In this document: positions 54,001 to 64,000 of the stretch, piece after piece
Position numbering within the stretch: the stretch's first letter is position 1
Layout: the number at the start of each line of letters is the position of its first letter
NCBI GenBank assembly: GCA_002269645.1
Contig: NIVC01000459.1
Coordinates: 124,001-188,000, forward strand
Length of the DNA stretch: 64,000 bases
Direction: 5' to 3'
DNA from: Macrostomum lignano
Taxonomy: Eukaryota
Notes under the pieces: model-generated
The model's database searches: none
Told to the model about the DNA's origin: nothing
Seen by the model: only the letters and a program-made list of their open reading frames with translations
Made by a program: the position numbers and the translations under genes

Positions 54001-54130
54001 ATATTTTTTATGGGAAGTGCAGTTTCTGTAATGTGGGTCTGTTAGACCAGACAGTTTGTGGCAATAGTTTCATCTGGTGATGTTAAATAAACTGCCAATG
54101 CACTTCTGAATCTTTAAACAAGCCCAGACA

Positions 54131-54436
54131 ATGGAGAAGCAGCTGAAGTCTCAGCTAGACACTGTTATGAACACCGAAGGCGTTGTTGCCGTACTGGCAG
54201 TGGACTCTCGAGGCCTGCCTCTGGCTAGTAAAGGCGCCGTGTCTGGCGATATTTCTGGCGCCGTGAAAAGCTTGGCCGACCATGCAACGGCACTGGCTAG
54301 GGAGGCATCCAGCTCTAGCAGTGGGCCGCGGGTTACTGCTGTGTCTGTTAACACGGACAGCATGTGCATGCTTGTGTCACAAGCGCCTGATGTTGGCAGC
54401 GGGGTTACAACTGCCGTGTTTAAATTTAACACTTGA
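54131..54436 (+). CDS. LAMTOR5: Ragulator complex subunit LAMTOR5 (HBXIP), single exon, 101 aa
   Basis: MEKQLKSQLDTVMNTEGVVAVLAVDSRGLPLASKGAVSGDISGAVKSLADHATAL...VTTAVFK matches the roadblock-fold HBXIP pattern (ME..L...L...M....VVGVL..D..GL.L...G). Confidence 0.85.
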   Translation: MEKQLKSQLDTVMNTEGVVAVLAVDSRGLPLASKGAVSGDISGAVKSLADHATALAREASSSSSGPRVTAVSVNTDSMCMLVSQAPDVGSGVTTAVFKFNT

Positions 54437-54502
54437 GTCTGCTTTAATAGCACTGCAGTGTGGATTCTGATGGGTGCCTGTAATTAAGTAAGTGTATTAC
54501 TG

Positions 54503-56135
54503 TGTCAGATAGAGTTCAGTAATCTGTCAGATAGAGTTCAGTAATCTGTCAGATAGAGTTCAGTAATCTGTCAGATTGAGTTTAGTAATCTGTCAGATAG
54601 AGTTTAGTAATCTGTCAGATAGAGTTTAGTAATCTGTCAGATAGAGTTTAGTAATCTGTCAGATAGAGTTCAGTAATCTGTCAGATTGAGTTCAGTAATC
54701 TGTCAGATTGAGTTCAGTAATCTGTTAGATAGAGTTCAGTAATCTGTCAGATAGAATTTAGTAATCTGTCAGATTGAGTTTAGTAATCTGTCAGATTGAG
54801 TTCAGTAATCTGTCAGATAGAGTTCAGTAATCTGTCAGATAGAGTTTAGTAATGTCATATAGAGTTCAGTAATCTGTCAGATAGAGTTCAGTAATCTGTC
54901 AGATAGAGTTTAGTAATCTGTCAGATAGAGTTTAGTAATCTGTCAGATAGAGTTCAGTAATCTGTGACCTGTCAGATAGAGTTCAGTAATCTGTCAGATA
55001 GAGTTCAGTAATCTGTCAGATAGAGTTTAGTAATCTGTCAGATAGAGTCTAGTAATCTGTCAGATAGAGTTTAGTAATCTGTCAGATAGTCTAGTAATCT
55101 GTCAGATAGAGTTTAGTAATCTGTCAGATAGAGTTCAGTAATCTGTCAGATAGAGTTCAGTAATCTGTCAGATAGAGTTCAGTAATCTGTCAGATAGAGT
55201 TCAGTTATCTGTCAGATAGAGTCTAGTAATCTGTCAGATAGAGTTCAGTAATCTGTCAGATAGAGTCTAGTAATCTGTCAGATTGAGTTTAGTAATCTGT
55301 CAGATAGAGTTCAGTAATCTGTCAGATAGAGTTTAGTAATCTGTCAGATTGAGTTTAGTAATCTGTCAGATAGAGTTCAGTAATCTGTCAGATAGAGTTT
55401 AGTAATCTGTCAGATTGAGTCTAGTAATCTGTCAGATAGAGTTCAGTAATCTGTCAGATTGAGTTTAGTAATCTGTCAGATAGAGTTTAGTAATCTGTCA
55501 GATAGAGTTTAGTAATCTGTCAGATAGAGTTTAGTAATCTGTCAGATAGAGTTCAGTAATCTGTCAGATTGAGTTCAGTAATCTGTCAGATTGAGTTCAG
55601 TAATCTGTTAGATAGAGTTCAGTAATCTGTCAGATAGAATTTAGCAATCTGTCAGATTGAGTTTAGTAATCTGTCAGATTGAGTTCAGTAATCTGTCAGA
55701 TTGAGTTCAGTAATCTGTCAGATTGAGTTCAGTAATCTGTTAGATAGAGTTCAGTAATATGTCAGATAGAATTTAGTAATCTGTCAGATTGAGTCTAGTA
55801 ATGTCAGATAGAGTTCAGTAATCTGTCAGATAGAGTTCAGTAATCTGTCAGATAGAGTTTAGTAATCTGTCAGATAGAGTTTAGTAATCTGTCAGATAGA
55901 GTTCAGTAATCTGTCAGATAGAGTTCAGTAATCTGTCAGATAGAGTTCAGTAATCTGTCAGATAGAGTTCAGTAATCTGTCAGATTGAGTTCAGTAATCT
56001 GTCAGATAGAGTTCAGTAATCTGTCAGATAGAGTTCAGTAATCTGTCAGATAGAGTTCAGTAATCTGTCAGATAGAGTTTTGAAATCTCAGATAGTCTAG
56101 TAATCTACGAGTATCAGATAGAGTTTAGTTATCCG
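54503..56135. repeat. 22-bp minisatellite (taatctgtcagatagagttcag)
   Basis: Direct tandem periodicity over ~1.6 kb. Confidence 0.97.
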
Positions 56136-56699
56136 TCAGGTAGTCTAGAAAGTTTTCTTAAATGTAAATAATAAATATCTGCCAACCAGTAATACACAGA
56201 CTGAGTTGTCATGAAGTCACATACGAGTATGTGCTCACTTATTCCGGTCAGGCATAGTAAAGGTGTATGATTACCTTCTCTAAGACTACTATTGAGAATT
56301 TCTTGTCTTACTTTTCTCTCAATATTGCCTGTTAATTGATCATCCAATTCTACTCAAATATTTAGTATTGTATTGGAGGTTTCGATTATTCTTATATTGT
56401 AAATTCAAATTATGTAACTCCACTCCAAATTTGATTTCACTTTGATGTGCATACACTACTACTATTTTCATTAAATTGTATTCTCTTTCGCGAAATTTCT
56501 GTCCGCCTGTATTAAATAAAAAAATCGCGATTGCTTAAATTTTATGCTTTCATTAGAAAACTTTGATGAACTTAAATCTGTGTTAAAGGCCTGTTGTTTT
56601 GATCAATGTTTTCTTCATTTACGCATTTGAACTTCCTTCAGCTGTACCATCCACAAAGTTTTCAATTAATAAGTATCCAATAATGTATGCCATCGCTCC

Positions 56700-56830
56700 C
56701 AGCCAATCAAAAGCATCCAATCCAATAGTCTCCTTTCTCAGCCAATCAGAAGCATCCAATCTAGTAGCCCCCTCTCTCAGCCAATCAGAAGAATCCAATC
56801 CAGAAGTCTCCTCTCTTAGCCAATCAGAAC
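56700..56830 (+). promoter_or_regulatory. Array of four AGCCAATCA (CCAAT/NF-Y) boxes at exact 39-bp spacing upstream of RBM8A
   Basis: CCAAT at 56703, 56742, 56781 and 56820, ending ~50 bp before the ATG. Confidence 0.6.
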
Positions 56831-56877
56831 CTCACTCGCTTATTGCCTATTAAAGCTCAACAGACCGCATCGCTAGC

Positions 56878-58857
56878 ATGGCCGACACCAGAGACATAAT
56901 TCGCATCACGGAGGACACCGAAGATGATTTTGAACAGGTCGTTGGCGGCGGCGGCGGCGACGAAGGCGTCCGCTTGGTTAAAGAGAGCGCCAAAAGTCGC
57001 AAAGGTCGCGGCTTCGAATCCGAGCAGGATCGCGACGATACGATGGAATTTGACGCTGTCGGCATTGACGACGGAGACACTGCCGGTCCGCAGCGCTCAG
57101 TGGAGGGCTGGATTCTGTTCGTGCGCAACCTGCACGAGGAGACCACCGAGGACGATCTGATGGACAAGTTCAACGAGTACGGCGAGGTGAAGAGCCTTCA
57201 TTTAAATTTGAACCGGCGAACCGGCTACATCAAAGGCTACGCGCTGGTTGAGTTTGAGCACTACAAGGAGGCGTCAACAGCTCAGAACAAGCTGAATGGC
57301 GCCGATCTCAATGGCCAGCGAATGCAGGTGTGTAAAGTGTTGCGTTTTATGAGGTTGAGGTGGGCAAAGTAGCAGCACCATGAGGGCCAAGCTCCAAGAC
57401 GCAGTGTGCGTGTACACTGCCTTACAATGAGACAGTCCGGCCCCTGACCCATTGAAAACGTTACCGTGACAAAAAATCGCTTGCCCTAGTAATAAAAAAT
57501 CATTTAAATAACGAGGTTCACTGAAAGGGCGTCTTCTAGAAATAACGGAATCGGAGTCGTGTGCCCCTATCTGTTACTCTAGGCCGCTAGGATACCAAAG
57601 TCAATCAATCCTGTGGATCCTATCCAATCATTTAGAAATAGGGAGTCCTCTAATTCTAGAACTCAATAGAAATCAACTGATCAGTAACGGCCGGCAATGA
57701 CTCAGCTCTCGATAATTAATCAAATAACAAAGACTGCAACAAAGGCTTACTGATCGGTATTCACTTCTTTCAGAGATGTAACCTCGTTTTGATAGCAGTT
57801 CTTGATAAGTCTCAAGTTCTCCCGAGGCTGCTCCTCTTTTTCAAACAACCGGTGGTGGTATTTAAAATTTGTGTTTTGCATATTTTTATCTTACTACTTC
57901 TAGTAGTCTGCTTATAATATATTTTGGAGATTTCTACATAGAAGTAGACTGAGTTCGGGGTTAGGTGTTCGGGTTTTCGGGGTTTTCGGGTTCAAAGGAA
58001 AAATGAACTGTAAAAAAATAAATTTCTAGCCGCTATGTAACGCTTTTAGGCATACGCTCGTAAAAAAGAGCGAATATTTAAGCTTCGAAAATCCGAAAAT
58101 AATGCTTGAATTTAAGTTTTCAATTACATATTGTATTTTGGGTTCTACGGATGAAATCTATGAATCTATCGATTCTGGCTAGCCGCTGGACTGCTTGTGA
58201 ATTTCAAAAATCCCTTTATTTATAATTGCAAACATTTTATTAAACACATGAATTAAGGATGTCAGGGTGTTTAACCTTTATTTTACAATTCTTTATTAAG
58301 CTACACCCGGATGTTGCACTAACAATGACAACTTAAAGCCAAGTTGGTAAACATTTGGATAAGCGGATGTTAAAGTCAATGCTAAGATCTTAAGAATGAG
58401 GAGTCAAATTATAGGGAGGAGAGTAAGGATCTGAGATTGCCAGCTGGTGACTAGAAATAGGAGTTAAGGAGCCAGGACTGCAAATGAGAACGATAAGTAG
58501 ACTACCAGAGGTACATGTACCTCAGGACGAGTAACTCCCTTCAGTCGTCACTCTTGGGGAAAAGGATCATCACGGAAAGTCTGAGATAAAGCATTCTCCT
58601 TTCAGGAAAGTTCGGGTCGGGTCGGGTTTCGGGTTCGGGGTTCCCGGAAAAATGGAAACCCGAACACCCCTAGTTTCAATTCAGTCAGAACCAAAGTGTC
58701 TATTGGCTGTTGACCCTCTGCTATTTATGAAACTTCATTTCAGGTTGACTGGGCGTTCACGCGCGGCCCGTCGGGCGGCGGCGGCGGCGGGCGCAAGTCG
58801 CGACGCCAGCGGGACACCAAGCCGCAGCAGCGTAGCGAGCGTAGCAGGAGTCGATAA
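56878..58857 (+). CDS. RBM8A: RNA-binding protein 8A (Y14/tsunagi, exon junction complex), 187 aa; exons 56878-57327 and 58744-58857
   Basis: The signature [25 protein letters not shown]...[20 protein letters not shown] is present. The CAG|gtgtgt donor and atttcag| acceptor restore the VDWAFTRGP end. AATAAA at 58977. Confidence 0.96.
57950..58675. mobile_element. Probable hAT-like MITE in the RBM8A intron
   Basis: Imperfect inverted ends (TAGG(GG)TGTTCGGGTTT) with TTCGGG subterminal repeats. No clear TSD. Confidence 0.4.
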
Positions 58858-59037
58858 GCTCAGCTGTCTGCCTGTTAGCCTTTGTAGTTTATTAATTACT
58901 AATTACTCCATTTCTTGTTGCTTTTTTTAAATACGAAGCTTTGTCACATCAGTGAAATTATCACGTGTCGTATTCTAATAAAATTATCTGCAAGTTTCAA
59001 CGTCATCTGATAAGTTAGGTTGAAATGATATATTCCA

Positions 59038-59680
59038 GGTAGATTCCGTGTTTAATGGGTAGATTCGGTGTTTAATGGGTAGATTCGGTGTTTAATGGGT
59101 AGATTCCGTGTTTAATTGGTAGATTCGGTGTTTAATGGGTAGATTCGGTGTTTAATGGGTAGATTCCGTGTTTAATTGGTAGATTCGGTGTTTAATGGGT
59201 AGATTCGGTGTTTAATGGGTAGATTCGGTGTTTAATTGGTAGATTCGGTGTTTAATGGGTAGATTCCGTGTTTAATTGGTAGATTCGGTGTTTAATGGGT
59301 AGATTCGGTGTTTAATGGGTAGATTCGTTGTTTAATGGGTAGATTCGTTGTTTAATTGGTAGATTCGGTGTTTAATGGGTAGATTCGGTGTTTAATGGGT
59401 AGATTCGGTGTTTAATGGGTAGATTCGGTGTTTAATGGGTAGATTCGGTGTTTAATGGGTAGATTCGGTGTTTAATGGGTAGATTCCGTGTTTAATTGGT
59501 AGATTTGGTGCTTAATGAGTAGATTCGGTGTTTAATTGGTAGATTCCGTGTTTAATTGGTAGATTCGGTGTTTAATTGGTAGATTTGGTGTTTAATGGGT
59601 AGATTTGATGTTCCATGGGTAGATTCTGTGTTTAATGGGTAGATTTGATGTTCAATGGGTAGATTCGGTGTTTAAAGGCC
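59038..59680. repeat. 20-bp minisatellite (agattcggtgtttaatgggt)
   Basis: Direct tandem periodicity. Confidence 0.96.
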
Positions 59681-60214
59681 AGATCCTAAGCAGATCCCGT
59701 GTGAGTGGATTTGTATATTAGCCCCCCCCCAAAAAAAATGATTTCGCTCTCTGCAGGCTTTGCAGATTCCAAAACATTTGCGCAAGTGCATTTGCTTATT
59801 ATTTTGCTTGCGTCCCTGTCTGTCCGCCTGTCCCGCATTGATGAATTATCAATAATAACTGTTGCTGCTCCTTAAAACCCCGGTTCCTCGCCCCAAGTAC
59901 TCTTACTCTATCTTGTTGTATACCTGTCTGTTCGTTTCAGTTTTTTATTATCCACTTTGTCCTTACTCTACGTATGCTTAAGTAGTTATCGCCTGATGTT
60001 AAACTTCATTTTGCCCTAATTTTTTAAACTTCAGAAGGGGGGTTCATTTGTTACGAGTGCTTAATGGTGTTTAATGTTTTTATAATACAGCATGAATGAA
60101 ATATTGCAAAGCAATAAAAATTGTTACTTCTAACGTATCATGTTTGTTCTGCTTTTATCAATTTTAAGCATTAAAAAATGTTGCTTGGGTCATCATAGTA
60201 GGATAACATAAGAG

Positions 60215-60765
60215 TCATAGTGAGACAGCATGAGGGTCATAGTGCCAATTTGAGGGTCATAATGCCAGTCTGAGGGTCACAATGCCAGTCTGAGGGTCAT
60301 AGTGCCAGCCTGAGTATTGCATATTGTTGGTGTCAGCCTTATGGTCATAATGCCAGTCTAATGGTCATAAGGCCTGGATGAGGGTCATAGTGCCATCATG
60401 AGGGTCATAGTGCCAATCTGAGGGTCATAATGGCAGTCTAAGGGTCATAGTGAGACAGCATGAGAGTCATATTGCCAATCTGGGGGTCATAGTGAGACTG
60501 CATGAGGTTCATATTGCCAATCTGGGGGTCATAGTGAGACTGCATGAGGGTCATAGTGCCAATCTGAGGGTCACAATACCAGTCTGAGGGTCATAATGCC
60601 AATCTGATAGTCATAATGGCAGTCTAAGGGTCATGTGAGACAGCATGAGGGTCATAGTGCCAATCTGAGGGTCATAATGGCAGTCTAAGGGTCATAGTGA
60701 GACAGCATGAGGGTCATAGTGCCAATCTGAGGATCATAGTGCCAGCCTGAGGGTCATAGTACCAT
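60215..60765. repeat. ~19-20-bp degenerate minisatellite (gagggtcatagtgccaatct)
   Basis: Direct tandem periodicity. Confidence 0.9.
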
Positions 60766-60838
60766 ATGTACTTTATTAGCGCATCCCCTACAATGCCCAC
60801 TGCCAGCCCTAGTCGGTCCCGCCGCCGCCACCCGTCAG

Positions 60839-61702
60839 CGGCTGCAGTGGCTGTTGCAGTGCCGCCAATTTCTATCGCCATCAGTCCTTCGCCATGGCCA
60901 TCGCGGCATTCGCAGCGGCGGCATCGGCCAGCAGGCACCGAAGAACAATGACAACTCGACGCCTCCCGAGCCGCAGTTCAGTCACGAGTACTGGTTGAAC
61001 CGGTGGCAGTCGCTGACTCCGCCCGATGCTGACGGCGGGCCCGGGGCGGCAGCTTGGCCTCGCTGGCACCGGCCGCAGGTGCATCCGTTCCTAGTGCGGC
61101 ACTGGGCAGCGCTGCGTTCGGGCTTGAAGCCGAAGGAAGAGGCGGCAGAGCAGCAGCAGCAGGTGCTCGTGCCGCTATGCGGTGCCAGCCTAGACCTAAC
61201 CTGGCTCTCGGAGCAGCCTGGCGTCTCCGGCGTTGTTGGCGTCGACCTCGGCGGCGAGTCGGTGTTCCGCCGTCTGCATCTGCAGCCTCCGCCTGGCCGC
61301 ACAGACCTGTGCCCGGGCCTGCACCGGGTCCGGTCTGGCATTGTCCGGCTGTACGGCGGGGATCTGTTCCATCCGGCTCTGAGACGGCTGGAAGCTGGCC
61401 AGTCAGACCTGGTGTGGGACCGCGGCTCCCTGGTGGTGATCAACTCGGCGGATAGGCGAGCCTACGTGGCACTGTTGCACTCTCTGTGCCGGCCTAGCCA
61501 TCGGATCCTCCTGGAGACCACCGTGTTTCCCAGGGCGCTGCATCCCGGCCCCCCGTTCTGCGTCGATGATGATCAGGTGAAGGCGCTGTACAGCGACCTG
61601 TACGACATCCAGCTGCTGGAGGCGTTCAGAGACGAGGAGCGTCGGCTGCTGTACAATTTGCCCGAACTCTTCTATCACTATTATCTGTTGACAGCTAAAT
61701 GA
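60839..61702 (+). CDS. TPMT: Thiopurine S-methyltransferase-like SAM-dependent methyltransferase; no in-frame ATG, true start unresolved
   Basis: Intronless open frame with EYWLNRWQ, VLVPLCG, DLVWDRGSLVVIN and HPGPPFCV, all TPMT-family motifs. Stop TGA at 61700-61702 and AATAAA at 61736. Confidence 0.85.
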   Translation, partial: RLQWLLQCRQFLSPSVLRHGHRGIRSGGIGQQAPKNNDNSTPPEPQFSHEYWLNRWQSLTPPDADGGPGAAAWPRWHRPQVHPFLVRHWAALRSGLKPKEEAAEQQQQVLVPLCGASLDLTWLSEQPGVSGVVGVDLGGESVFRRLHLQPPPGRTDLCPGLHRVRSGIVRLYGGDLFHPALRRLEAGQSDLVWDRGSLVVINSADRRAYVALLHSLCRPSHRILLETTVFPRALHPGPPFCVDDDQVKALYSDLYDIQLLEAFRDEERRLLYNLPELFYHYYLLTAK

Positions 61703-61919
61703 TTTATGACTGCTTTCTGTTGCTGAGGGCCTCAAAATAAATATGCATAAATTTTACCTATCCGGTGCTAATCGTGCTTCTTGATTATAAACAATTTCGC
61801 TGCACCTTTAAAAGCATGTCACGTTTAATTAATTGCTTTTGAATCTTTTAATTCTACAGTCCGTGCTGCTTTCAGTGCTAATATAAGCTGAAGCTTTTCT
61901 AGGGTCCACTAACCCTTCT

Positions 61920-64000
61920 TTGAGTAGCTTTTCCTTCAGTAGCTTTTCTCTCAGTAGCTTTTCCCTCAGTAGCTTTTCCCTCAGTAGCTTTTTCCTTAGT
62001 AGCTTTTCCCTCAGTAGCTTTTCCCTCAGTAGCTTTTCCCTCAGTAGCTTTTCCCTCAGTAGGTTTTTCCTCAGTAGCTTTTCCCTCAGTAGCTTTCCCT
62101 TAGTAGCTTTTTCCTCAGTAGCTTTTCCCTCAGTAGCTTTCCCTTAGTAGTTTTTCCCTCAGTAGCTTTTCCCTCAGTAGCTTTCCCTCAGTAGCTTTTC
62201 CCTCAGTAGCTTTCCCTCAGTAGGTTTTTCCTCAGTAGCTTTTCCCTCAGTAGCTTTCCCTTAGTAGCTTTCCCTTAGTAGCTTTTCCCTCAGTAGCTTT
62301 TCCCTCAGTAGGTTTTTCCTCAGTAGCTTTTCCCTCAGTAGCTTTCCCTTAGTAGCTTTTTCCTCAGTAGCTTTTCCCTCAGTAGCTTTTCCCTCAGTAG
62401 CCTTTCCCTCAGTAGCTTTCCCTTAGTAGCTTTCCCTCAGTAGCTTTTCCCTCAGTAGCTTTCCCTCAGTAGGTTTTTCCTCAGTAGCTTTTCCCTCAGT
62501 AGCTTTCCCTTAGTAGCTTTTCCCTCAGTAGCTTTTCCCTCGGTAGCTTTTCCCTCAGTAGCCTTTCCCTCAGTAGCTTTTCCCTTAGTAGCTTTCCCTC
62601 AGTAGCTTTTCCCTCAGTAGCTTTTTCCTCAGTAGCTTTTTCCTCAGTAGCTTTTTCCTCAGTAGCTTTTCCCTCAGTAGCTTTTTCCTCAGTAGCTTTC
62701 CCTTAGTAGCTTTTCCCTCAGTAGCTTTTTCCTCAGTAGCTTTTCCCTCAGTAGCTTTTCCCTCAGTAGCTTTCCCTCAGTAGCTTTTCCCTCAGTAGCT
62801 TTTCCCTCAGTAGCTTTTCCCTCAGTAGCTTTCCCTCAGTAGCTTTTCCCTCAGTAGCTTTTCCCTCAGTAGCTTTCCCTCAGTAGCTTTTCCCTCAGTA
62901 GCTTTCCCTTAGTAGCTTTTCTCTCAGTAGCTTTCCCTTAGTAGCTTTTCCCTCAGTAGCTTTTCCCTCAGTAGCTTTTCCCTCAGTAGCTTTTCCCTCA
63001 GTAGCTTTTCCCTCAGTAGCTTTCCCTTAGTAGCTTTTCCCTCAGTAGCTTTTCCCTCAGTAGCTTTCCTTTCAGTAGCTTTTCCCTCAGTAGCTTTCCC
63101 TTAGTAGCTTTTCCCTCAGTAGCTTTTCCCTCAATAGCTTTCCCTCAGTAGCTTTTCCCTCAGTAGCTTTCCCTTAGTAGCTTTCCCTCAGTAGCTTTTC
63201 CCTCAGTAGCTTTTCCCTCAGTAGCTTTCCCTTAGTAGCTTTCCCTCAGTAGCTTTTCCCTCAGTAGCTTTTTCCTCAGTAGCTTTTCCCTCAGTAGCTT
63301 TTTCCTCAGTAGCTTTTTCCTCAGTAGCTTTTTCCTCAGTAGCTTTTCCCTCAGTAGCTTTTTCCTCAGTAGCTTTCCCTTAGTAGCTTTTCCCTCAGTA
63401 GCTTTTTCCTCAGTAGCTTTTCCCTCAGTAGCTTTTCCCTCAGTAGCTTTCCCTTAGTAGCTTTTCCCTCAGTAGCTTTTCCCTCAGTAGCTTTCCCTCA
63501 GTAGCTTTTCCCTCAGTAGCTTTCCCTTAGTAGCTTTTCTCTCAGTAGCTTTCCCTTAGTAGCTTTTTCCTCAGTAGCTTTTCCCTCAGTAGCTTTCCCT
63601 TAGTAGCTTTTCCCTCAGTAGCTTTCCCTCAGTAGCTTTTCCCTCAGTAGCTTTTTCCTCAGTAGCTTTCCCTTAGTAGCTTTTCCCTCAGTAGCTTTTT
63701 CCTCAGTAGCTTTTTCCTCAGTAGCTTCTCCCTCAGTAGCTTTTCCCTCAGTAGCTTTCCCTTAGTAGCTTTCCCTCAGTAGCTTTTCCCTCAGTAGCTT
63801 TTTCCTCAGTAGCTTTTCCCTCAGTAGCTTTCCCTTAGTAGCTTTTCTCTCAGTAGCTTTCCCTTAGTAGCTTTTCCCTCAGTAGCTTTTCCCTCAGTAG
63901 CTTTCCCTTAGTAGTTTTTCCCTCAGTAGCTTTTCCCTCAGTAGCTTTCCCTCAGTAGCTTTTCCCTTAGTAGCTTTTTCCTCAGTAGCTTTTTCCTCAG
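61920..64000. repeat. 15-17-bp satellite (cagtagcttttccct), runs off the window end
   Basis: Direct tandem periodicity over >2 kb. Confidence 0.97.

What the first reader, a model, noticed from the sequence alone, without database searches (positions are those of the whole stretch)
60839..61702. TPMT-like ORF with no methionine codon: candidate for initiation at the spliced-leader AUG
Seen: the frame is open from 60740 to 61702 with no ATG, and the nearby ATGs (60766, 60793, 60895) are out of frame. Three CAG acceptors (ending 60838, 60847, 60859) all leave the downstream sequence in frame 0. Established: flatworm spliced leaders end in AUG, and that AUG can serve as the initiator Met. Inference: trans-splicing would give e.g. 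MRLQWLLQCRQFLSPSVLRHGHRGIRS..., an Arg-rich, acid-free N-terminus resembling a mitochondrial presequence, whereas vertebrate TPMT is cytosolic.
Basis: partly seen in the sequence, partly recalled or inferred. Interest (0 to 1): 0.7.

Follow-up and report, generated by a model that had tools for sequence, protein, structure and literature searches.

The report
Flatworm TPMT gene copy lacking ATG
This is one of two near-identical copies of an ordinary animal-type thiopurine methyltransferase gene in the flatworm Macrostomum lignano; it has no start codon because one base reads CTG where the sister copy reads ATG, so borrowing the start codon from the spliced leader is possible but not needed to explain it and is untested.

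Summary
The frame 60740-61702 is open, encodes a TPMT domain (Pfam PF05724, 114 bits) and has no in-frame ATG. The window is Macrostomum lignano (Mlig_3_7, contig NIVC01000459.1), whose spliced leader does end in ATG.

- The three in-frame CAG "acceptors" are Gln codons. Ten of 14 AGs in this stretch are in frame for the same reason.
- The Arg-rich, acid-poor N-terminus appears in all six frames of this GC-rich DNA.

The main new fact is the sister copy on NIVC01000042.1. It is colinear, with 7 differences in 963 nt and no indels, and it has an in-frame ATG exactly where the window has CTG (60800-60802). Both published RNA-seq-based gene models start at the next codon (60803). That is upstream of the proposed acceptors and does not follow an AG.

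My weights:
- About 0.4: a one-base start-codon difference between recent duplicates, most likely a loss in this copy.
- About 0.33: spliced-leader AUG initiation at 60848 or 60860, which match the published YTNCAG motif. The gene sits in an operon-like cluster.

No M. lignano RNA data could be reached, so this stays open. Interest is low to moderate.

The parts
60740..61702 (+). Stop-to-stop open frame (320 sense codons plus TAA) with no ATG. It encodes the TPMT homologue.
   Evidence: translation and ATG frames; PF05724, 114 bits.
60800..60802 (+). In-frame CTG codon. The homologous codon in the sister copy (L001:9998-10000) is ATG. Its context, cccaCTGc, is weak (pyrimidine at -3, C at +4).
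60803..61702 (+). CDS as annotated in GenBank for this contig: protein P0040, 299 aa, of the same gene family as BOX15_Mlig018277g1, 'hypothetical protein, partial'. It is a single exon. The model's 5' end (60801-60803) does not follow an AG.
   Evidence: The locus L002 offset gives window 60803-61702.
60992..61699 (+). Conserved TPMT methyltransferase domain, running from the W..RW motif to the C-terminal YLLTAK. The family motifs PLCG, GVD, DRG and GPPF are all present.
   Evidence: alignment to human TPMT 2bzg; invariant columns W85, W89, P145, G148, D208, D227, R228, P271, P272.
60803..60991 (+). N-terminal extension, up to 63 codons, with no counterpart in single-domain TPMTs. It is Arg-rich and acid-poor, but so are the other five frames of this DNA.
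60842..60847 (+). CTGCAG, a candidate SL acceptor (exon start 60848, in frame). It matches [T/C]TNCAG and is identical in the sister copy.
   Evidence: motif from PMC8629364.
60854..60859 (+). TTGCAG, a candidate SL acceptor (exon start 60860, in frame). It matches [T/C]TNCAG and is identical in the sister copy.
60833..60838 (+). It does not match the motif.
60766..60951 (+). Out-of-frame (frame 2) 61-codon ORF opened by ATG 60766, with a second ATG at 60793. It overlaps the start of the TPMT frame and would act as an inhibitory upstream ORF if it lies in the mRNA.
61736..61741 (+). AATAAA polyadenylation signal, 34 nt after the stop codon.
60231..60764 (.). Tandem array (20/42-bp unit, about 26 copies) that ends 36 nt before the CTG codon. 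It carries eight CCAAT motifs, all on the + strand, the last at 60722.
56857..58857 (+). Upstream same-strand gene, RBM8A/Y14 (BOX15_Mlig016668g4, 194 aa, two exons). Its AATAAA is at 58977.
54110..54436 (+). First gene of the same-strand cluster, LAMTOR5 (108 aa as annotated; ATG at 54131).

Best explanation
This is one of two recently duplicated (homeologous) copies of an intronless, animal-type thiopurine S-methyltransferase gene of Macrostomum lignano. The frame has no Met because of one base: codon 60800-60802 is CTG here and ATG in the sister copy.

The most likely reading is that ATG is the family's own start codon and this copy has lost it by an A-to-C change. The protein would then start at MPALVGPA..., giving 300 aa with a roughly 60-residue N-terminal extension.

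On that reading the window copy makes little or no TPMT by ordinary scanning. At best it gets weak CUG initiation in a poor context, or rescue if the mRNA happens to be trans-spliced in frame. The sister copy carries the function.

Shown: the ATG/CTG difference, the colinearity of the two copies, the intact domain and the position of the gene models. Inferred: the direction of the change (loss rather than gain) and the consequence for translation.
For: - The sister locus L001 (NIVC01000042.1) is syntenic (RBM8A, repeats, TPMT, repeats). Over the 963-nt frame it differs at 7 positions with no indel, and one of those positions is 60800 C/A, which makes an in-frame ATG.
- The GC-rich, coding-like composition (GC1 0.84, GC2 0.58, GC3 0.79 for 60803-60859, against GC3 0.38 for 60740-60802) begins at about 60780-60800. 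That is at this codon, not at the proposed acceptors.
- Both GenBank models begin at the very next codon, and neither is cut at 60839, 60848 or 60860. The pipeline cuts at SL peaks when it sees them.
- M. lignano is described as a hidden polyploid (abstract of PMC10468722). Unique flanks of the two copies differ by 1.4-1.9% and the CDS by 0.67%. Five of the 7 differences change an amino acid, which is compatible with relaxed constraint on a redundant copy.
- Most genes use their own ATG. SL-AUG-dependent mRNAs are a minority even in Schistosoma: more than 40 cDNAs according to Cheng et al. 2006, as cited in PMC9851317.
Against: - The ATG of the sister copy sits in a weak context (C at -3, C at +4).
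- It lies 7 nt after an out-of-frame ATG in a better context (60793).
- It lies outside, or at the very edge of, the annotated transcript: P0001 is 'partial' and begins with Pro, so the model starts 0-2 nt before 60803. If that 5' end is the true transcription start, the ATG is not in the mRNA of either copy and is an accident.
- The direction of change cannot be polarised. No third copy or orthologue from another Macrostomum species is in the collections.
- Two of the 7 differences lie in the 108 nt upstream of 60848, a density of 1.9% that resembles non-coding flanks.
Confidence: 0.4

Rival explanations
1. Spliced-leader AUG initiation, the reader's hypothesis, applying to both copies. The primary transcript starts near 60800 or is part of a LAMTOR5-RBM8A-TPMT polycistron. 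The SL (...TTGCATG) is trans-spliced to the in-frame acceptor at 60847|60848 or 60859|60860, and the SL AUG starts translation as MWLLQCRQF... or MCRQFLSPS.... The ATG in the sister copy then lies in the outron and is irrelevant.
For: - The M. lignano SL ends in ATG, its acceptor motif is [T/C]TNCAG, and 30-39% of genes are trans-spliced.
- CTGCAG|60848 and TTGCAG|60860 match the motif and are identical in both copies.
- Trans-splicing there would remove both out-of-frame upstream ATGs (60766 and 60793).
- All three genes are on one strand, with repeat-adjusted gaps of 709 and 773 nt. That is under the 1-kb threshold used to call operons in this species.
- The model's 5' end at 60801-60803 excludes the sister copy's ATG.
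- The mechanism itself is established in Schistosoma (Cheng et al. 2006, cited).
Against: - No SL-joined RNA was seen or could be looked for here.
- Gene models built with SL-peak cutting start upstream of these sites.
- In-frame AGs are trivial here, 10 of 14, and the motif count is 3 against 1.66 expected.
- The would-be outron, 60803-60847, is the most GC-rich and most coding-like piece of the locus, at 0.80 GC.
- An in-frame ATG appearing by chance in the sister copy, right at the edge of the GC-rich frame, needs a specific substitution at one of only two near-cognate codons (60764 ATA, 60800 CTG).
Confidence: 0.33
2. Non-AUG initiation. The mRNA is not trans-spliced and TPMT is made from the CUG at 60800, or from another in-frame near-cognate codon (CUG 60842, CUG 60851, UUG 60854), at low efficiency.
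For: CUG is the most efficient near-cognate start codon in eukaryotes (general knowledge). The CTG sits exactly where the sister copy has ATG.
Against: All candidate codons have a pyrimidine at -3 and none has G at +4. If the 5' end is at 60801-60803, the CTG at 60800 is not in the mRNA. The first AUG a scanning ribosome would meet is 60894, which is out of frame and in a strong context (gccATGg).
Confidence: 0.1
3. Consensus or assembly error, or a low-frequency variant. The true base at 60800 is A and the copy has a normal ATG.
For: The assembly is long-read based, and the two copies are about 99% identical, which complicates polishing (describes the assembly and annotation in general terms).
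Against: Mis-polishing between copies would homogenise them, not create a private C. Long-read errors are mostly indels, and this stretch has none between the copies. Six other substitutions show that the two loci were resolved as distinct.
Confidence: 0.07
4. An unannotated upstream cis-spliced exon supplies the ATG and joins one of the in-frame acceptors.
For: The acceptor-like sites exist. An older automatic prediction (P0002, UniProt A0A1I8JQ51) fused RBM8A to TPMT.
Against: - Both RNA-seq-based models are single-exon.
- The 1.9 kb upstream consists of two tandem arrays plus 37%-GC unique sequence with no coding-like segment.
- The P0002 fusion reads the last RBM8A exon in the wrong frame and carries frameshifts in the TPMT part, so it is an artefact of an indel-rich earlier assembly.
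Confidence: 0.05

Closest known systems
SL-AUG-initiated mRNAs of Schistosoma mansoni (Cheng, Cohen, Ndegwa and Davis 2006, J Biol Chem 281:733; 'slORFs' in PMC9851317)
   Same: Both are flatworms whose SL ends in AUG. The recipient ORF has no in-frame AUG of its own in this copy, and in-frame AG acceptors lie near its 5' end.
   Different: For the schistosome cases, SL-joined cDNAs exist and use of the SL AUG was tested. Here no SL-joined RNA is known, the published gene model is not cut at the candidate sites, and a sister copy has its own in-frame ATG.
Vertebrate thiopurine S-methyltransferase (human TPMT, PDB 2bzg/2h11; mouse 2gb4)
   Same: It shares the Pfam family PF05724. It aligns from the W..W N-terminal motif to the C-terminal YLLT.K, and the PLCG, DRG and GPPF motifs are conserved. 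The nearest relatives outside Macrostomum are animal TPMTs from Owenia, Branchiostoma, Tigriopus, Clavelina and Tubulanus.
   Different: The gene is intronless. The protein has a 45-63-residue N-terminal extension and a 17-residue insert (LTPPDADGGPGAAAWPR) after the first Trp motif. Identity is only about 30-37%, and this copy has no ATG.
Start-codon loss in one member of a recently duplicated gene pair (early non-functionalisation of homeologs in polyploids)
   Same: There are two syntenic copies about 1-2% diverged in a species described as a hidden polyploid (PMC10468722 abstract). One has ATG and the other CTG, and the rest of the ORF is still intact.
   Different: The direction of the change is not established, and the ATG-bearing copy has an unfavourable start context.
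Downstream genes of M. lignano operons (Ustyantsev and Berezikov 2021, PMC8629364)
   Same: The orientation matches the upstream gene, repeats fill the intergenic space, and the repeat-adjusted distance of 773 nt is under 1 kb.
   Different: The published definition also requires that the downstream gene be SL trans-spliced, which is unknown here. CCAAT-bearing repeats directly upstream could equally form the gene's own promoter.

Membership tests
Thiopurine S-methyltransferase family (Pfam PF05724) | Match to the family profile above the curated threshold | tested here: met
   114 bits against a cut-off of 26, E=1e-32, profile positions 17-191 of 218.
Thiopurine S-methyltransferase family (Pfam PF05724) | Conserved SAM-binding and active-site motifs (PLCG, acidic residue after beta-2, D in the G-D-x-F motif, DRG, GPPF) and N-terminal Trp residues | tested here: met
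   alignment to human 2bzg; invariant W85, W89, P145, G148, D152, D208, D227, R228, P271, P272.
Thiopurine S-methyltransferase family (Pfam PF05724) | S-methyltransferase activity on thiopurines or other thiol or selenium substrates | not testable with these tools
   Needs an enzyme assay of the expressed protein.
SL-AUG-initiated mRNA (flatworm slORF) | The species' spliced leader ends in AUG | tested here: met
   PMC8629364: the SL is CGGTCTCTTACTGCGAAGACTCAATTTATTGCATG. No SL RNA gene lies in the window itself.
SL-AUG-initiated mRNA (flatworm slORF) | The mRNA is SL trans-spliced (SL-joined reads or cDNA at a defined acceptor) | not testable with these tools
   No M. lignano RNA-derived sequences are in the collections, not even for RBM8A. 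The indirect evidence goes against it: both gene models start at 60803, not after an AG.
SL-AUG-initiated mRNA (flatworm slORF) | The acceptor leaves the SL AUG in frame with the ORF, with no intervening stop | tested here: met
   exon starts 60839, 60848 and 60860, and 7 more in-frame AGs up to 61010. The feature is trivial here because the AGs are the ends of CAG, GAG and AAG codons.
SL-AUG-initiated mRNA (flatworm slORF) | No genomic in-frame AUG is available to start the protein | tested here: inconclusive
   Met for this copy. The sister copy has an in-frame ATG at the position homologous to 60800, but that ATG may lie outside the transcript.
Mitochondrial matrix-targeting presequence | N-terminus rich in Arg/Lys and free of acidic residues | tested here: inconclusive
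   frame 0 has 7 R+K and 2 D+E over 60803-60982, but the other five frames have 7-9 R+K and 0-7 D+E. The composition follows from the 66% GC content.
Mitochondrial matrix-targeting presequence | Amphipathic helix | tested here: inconclusive
   the maximum 18-residue hydrophobic moment is 0.54 (QFLSPSVLRHGHRGIRSG), reached by 6-21% of shuffles of the same residues.
Mitochondrial matrix-targeting presequence | Prediction by a trained classifier (TargetP, MitoFates), or localisation shown by experiment | not testable with these tools
   No such predictor is available here.
M. lignano operon, downstream gene | Same strand as the upstream gene, with a repeat-adjusted intergenic distance under 1 kb | tested here: met
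   1945 nt minus 638 and 534 nt of tandem repeats leaves 773 nt.
M. lignano operon, downstream gene | The downstream gene is SL trans-spliced | not testable with these tools
   As above, no RNA data are available.

The most novel reading that the evidence does not exclude
Both M. lignano TPMT copies produce primary transcripts without any usable in-frame AUG. They depend on the AUG donated by the spliced leader at 60848 or 60860, giving a TPMT with an N-terminal extension that sends it to mitochondria. This would be the first documented SL-AUG-dependent gene in a free-living flatworm, and an organelle-targeted TPMT.
Probability: 0.25. Interest if true: 0.45.

Novelty: new member of a known kind. 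Interest (0 to 1): 0.27.

Why it matters
If the start codon was simply lost in one homeolog, this is a small, ordinary example of early decay of duplicated genes in a polyploid flatworm. It is also a caution for annotators, because both GenBank entries are 'partial' proteins whose true start is unresolved.

If the SL AUG is used, it would extend a mechanism shown in schistosomes to a transgenic model flatworm, where it could be dissected with reporters. Either way, the case shows that a Met-less ORF in a trans-splicing species should be compared with its paralogues before the SL is invoked.

Tried and rejected
- **RNA evidence through the protein collections.** The TPMT cluster holds only the two GenBank proteins. 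Even the housekeeping neighbour RBM8A has no RNA-assembly-derived member from M. lignano. The collections therefore hold no M. lignano transcript assemblies, and exact look-ups of hypothetical SL-initiated products would be pointless.
- **A third copy to polarise ATG against CTG.** Look-ups with TPMT, RBM8A and LAMTOR5 returned only the two contigs. The full-library HMMER search found no other Macrostomum or flatworm orthologue.
- **Literature and supplements.** A search for the gene id or for TPMT in M. lignano papers found nothing. Cheng et al. 2006 is not held.
- **Horizontal transfer from bacteria.** I considered this because the gene is intronless and GC-rich, and the first word-based search listed mostly prokaryote-type hits. 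I rejected it because the best full-library hits are animal TPMTs and the C-terminus is of the animal type.
- **The RBM8A-TPMT fusion protein P0002.** I rejected it as an artefact of an indel-rich older assembly.
- **An assembly indel putting ATG 60793 or 60766 in frame.** This is unlikely. Two independent loci agree base for base in length over 963 nt, and no homopolymer longer than 3 lies between 60796 and 60950.
- **An SL RNA gene, tRNA or Rfam family in the window.** None was found.

Full report
**What the sequence shows**

The frame that begins at 60740, after TGA at 60737-60739, runs to TAA at 61700-61702 without a stop and without a single ATG. The neighbouring ATGs are out of frame:
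- 60766 and 60793 are in frame 2 and open a 61-codon ORF ending at 60951.
- 60894 is in frame 1.

AGs end at 60838, 60847 and 60859, and each leaves the downstream sequence in frame. The product is a genuine TPMT homologue. Pfam PF05724 scores 114 bits against a cut-off of 26. Human TPMT aligns at E=6e-22 right to the C-terminal LLT.K, and the family's invariant residues are present.

**Where the window comes from**

The closest database protein (99% identity) is GenBank PAA92640.1, 'hypothetical protein BOX15_Mlig018277g1, partial' of Macrostomum lignano. The window's own protein, P0040, is annotated on contig NIVC01000459.1 of assembly GCA_002269645.1 as a 299-aa single-exon CDS at window 60803-61702.

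It is the third gene of a same-strand cluster: LAMTOR5 (54110-54436), RBM8A/Y14 (56857-58857) and TPMT. The spacers are mostly tandem arrays. After subtracting them the gaps are 709 and 773 nt.

The gene is GC-rich, at 65% against 35-37% in unique flanks. It is intronless and has an AATAAA 34 nt after the stop.

**How much of the oddity is chance**

An internal-Met-free TPMT body is not unusual. Ten of 184 homologues have none, and the family's internal Met frequency is 1.6%. What is unusual is only the missing initiator.

The three in-frame CAGs carry no information. They are the Gln codons of ...R-Q|R-L-Q|W-L-L-Q|C.... Ten of the 14 AGs between 60813 and 61010 are in frame, simply because CAG, GAG and AAG codons end in AG. 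The published SL acceptor motif [T/C]TNCAG occurs 3 times in the ORF against 1.66 expected from base composition.

The Arg-rich, acid-free N-terminus is likewise weak evidence. Over 60803-60982, frame 0 has 7 R+K and 2 D+E, while the other five frames have 7-9 R+K and 0-7 D+E. The best 18-residue hydrophobic moment, 0.54, is reached by 6-21% of shuffles.

**The key new fact**

The second annotated copy (locus L001, contig NIVC01000042.1) is syntenic and colinear. Over the 963-nt frame it differs at 7 positions with no indel. One of the seven is 60800. The window reads cccaCTGcca and the sister copy reads cccaATGcca, and that ATG is in frame.

So the Met-less state of the window ORF is a single-base difference from a copy that does have an in-frame ATG. 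That ATG would give MPALVGPATATRQRLQW..., 300 aa.

Unique non-coding flanks of the two copies differ by 1.4-1.9% plus small indels, and the CDS by 0.67%. Five of the 7 differences are non-synonymous, counting the start codon. The numbers are too small to separate purifying from relaxed selection.

**What the published gene models add**

The Mlig_3_7 annotation was built from RNA-seq with StringTie and TACO. A step called TBONE then cuts transcripts at peaks of SL-trimmed reads and at poly(A) sites, and TransDecoder follows (PMC5730564).

Both TPMT models are '5' partial' and begin with Pro at 60803. TransDecoder would have reported a complete, Met-initiated ORF for the sister copy had its ATG been in the transcript. 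The modelled 5' ends must therefore lie at 60801-60803.

None of those positions follows an AG, so the end is not an SL-defined boundary. The models were also not cut at 60839, 60848 or 60860.

The same 5' end cuts the other way too. If it is the true transcription start, the sister copy's ATG is outside the mRNA and neither copy has a usable in-frame AUG.

Other context is ambiguous:
- The ATG context is weak (C at -3, C at +4), and a better-context out-of-frame ATG lies 7 nt upstream.
- The GC-rich, codon-periodic composition starts at about 60780-60800, that is at this codon rather than at the proposed acceptors.

**Background on the mechanism**

The M. lignano SL is CGGTCTCTTACTGCGAAGACTCAATTTATTGCATG. 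About 30% of genes are trans-spliced, the acceptor motif is [T/C]TNCAG, and operons are called when the repeat-adjusted distance is under 1 kb and the downstream gene is SL trans-spliced (PMC8629364).

All reported flatworm SLs end in ATG, which can supply a start codon (PMC12582326). In S. mansoni the SL AUG is in frame in 28% of trans-spliced transcripts, and more than 40 cDNAs need it (Cheng et al. 2006, as summarised in PMC9851317). The sites at 60848 (CTGCAG|) and 60860 (TTGCAG|) fit the motif and are conserved in both copies, while 60839 (CGTCAG|) does not fit.

**Weighing the explanations**

Two readings remain close.

(a) ATG at the 60800 position is the family's start codon and this copy has lost it.
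- In favour: it needs only the ordinary prior that genes have their own ATG, plus one neutral hit in a redundant homeolog.
- Against: it must accept a poor start context and a transcript model that just misses the ATG.

(b) Both copies rely on the SL AUG.
- In favour: it explains the missing ATG, the removal of the upstream out-of-frame ATGs and the operon-like setting.
- Against: it starts from a lower prior, needs an accidental in-frame ATG in the sister copy at one of only two near-cognate codons, requires a very GC-rich 46-58-nt outron, and needs SL reads to have been missed by the annotation.

My rough odds are 0.40 for (a) and 0.33 for (b). The remainder is shared by near-cognate initiation (0.10), a consensus error at 60800 (0.07) and an unannotated upstream exon (0.05). 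Readings (a) and (b) are not exclusive, because a copy that lost its ATG could still be rescued by in-frame trans-splicing.

**Origin of the gene**

The word-based search listed mainly prokaryote-type TPMTs at 30-36% identity. The exhaustive HMMER search instead ranks animal proteins first: Owenia fusiformis, Branchiostoma lanceolatum and B. belcheri, Tigriopus californicus, Clavelina lepadiformis and Tubulanus polymorphus. The C-terminus is of the animal type. It is therefore an animal TPMT, not a bacterial transfer.

Single-domain relatives start 10-20 residues before the W..RW motif. The M. lignano protein has 43-63 extra residues, depending on the start. One amphioxus TPMT model (P0042) also has an Arg-rich, acid-free extension of about 55 residues. 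An organelle-targeted TPMT is thus not excluded, but the evidence here is compositional only.

**What could not be done**

No M. lignano RNA-derived sequences are reachable. Even RBM8A has only GenBank and UniProt members. No third gene copy or Macrostomum orthologue is available. The gene is not mentioned in the held literature or supplements. The decisive tests are SL-read mapping, 5'-end mapping, read support for the C at 60800, outgroup sequences and initiation-site profiling. They are listed under next steps.

**Verdict**

It is a new instance of a known kind of thing under either reading, and interest is low to moderate.

Noticed in passing
window 54110-61702 (+): Three unrelated genes lie head-to-tail on one strand: LAMTOR5, RBM8A/Y14 and TPMT. 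Their spacers are filled by tandem arrays, and the repeat-adjusted gaps are 709 and 773 nt. This matches the published operon criterion for M. lignano if the downstream genes are trans-spliced.
   Followed up: partly
window 56854-56879: The RBM8A gene model starts at 56856-56857, right after an AG (56854-56855). An SL AUG joined there would open a 7-codon upstream ORF that stops 2 nt before the real ATG (56879). A second AG at 56862-56863 would instead put the SL AUG in frame, 5 codons upstream of that ATG.
   Followed up: no
window 56696-56829 and 60231-60764: Both RBM8A and TPMT are directly preceded by tandem repeats whose units carry CCAAT motifs, all on the coding strand. There are nine upstream of RBM8A and eight upstream of TPMT, the last 81 nt before 60803. 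These may be repeat-built NF-Y-type promoters, which would argue for a separate promoter for each gene.
   Followed up: partly
window 54503-56079, 59038-59675, 61923-64000: There are long, well-conserved microsatellite or minisatellite arrays: a 22-bp unit in 72 copies, a 20-bp unit in 32 copies, and a 15-bp unit in at least 141 copies that runs off the window end. The same arrays occur at the sister locus with different copy numbers.
   Followed up: partly
L001:1446-8059 compared with window 56857-58857: The RBM8A gene spans 6.6 kb in the sister locus but 2.0 kb here, so its single intron carries a roughly 4.6-kb insertion or deletion difference between the homeologs.
   Followed up: no
protein P0002 (UniProt A0A1I8JQ51): The UniProt entry 'RRM domain-containing protein' (405 aa) is a chimera of RBM8A and a frameshifted TPMT. 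It comes from an older, indel-rich assembly and should not be used as a paralogue.
   Followed up: yes
proteins P0041, P0042, P0043, P0044, P0046: In several invertebrates (Owenia, Branchiostoma, Tigriopus, Clavelina, Tubulanus) the best TPMT hits are proteins with two or three tandem TPMT domains. The Branchiostoma lanceolatum model also has an Arg-rich, acid-free N-terminal extension of about 55 residues.
   Followed up: no
window 60992-61060: The M. lignano TPMT has a 17-residue Pro/Gly/Ala-rich insert (LTPPDADGGPGAAAWPR) between the two conserved N-terminal Trp motifs. It is absent from all aligned homologues.
   Followed up: no
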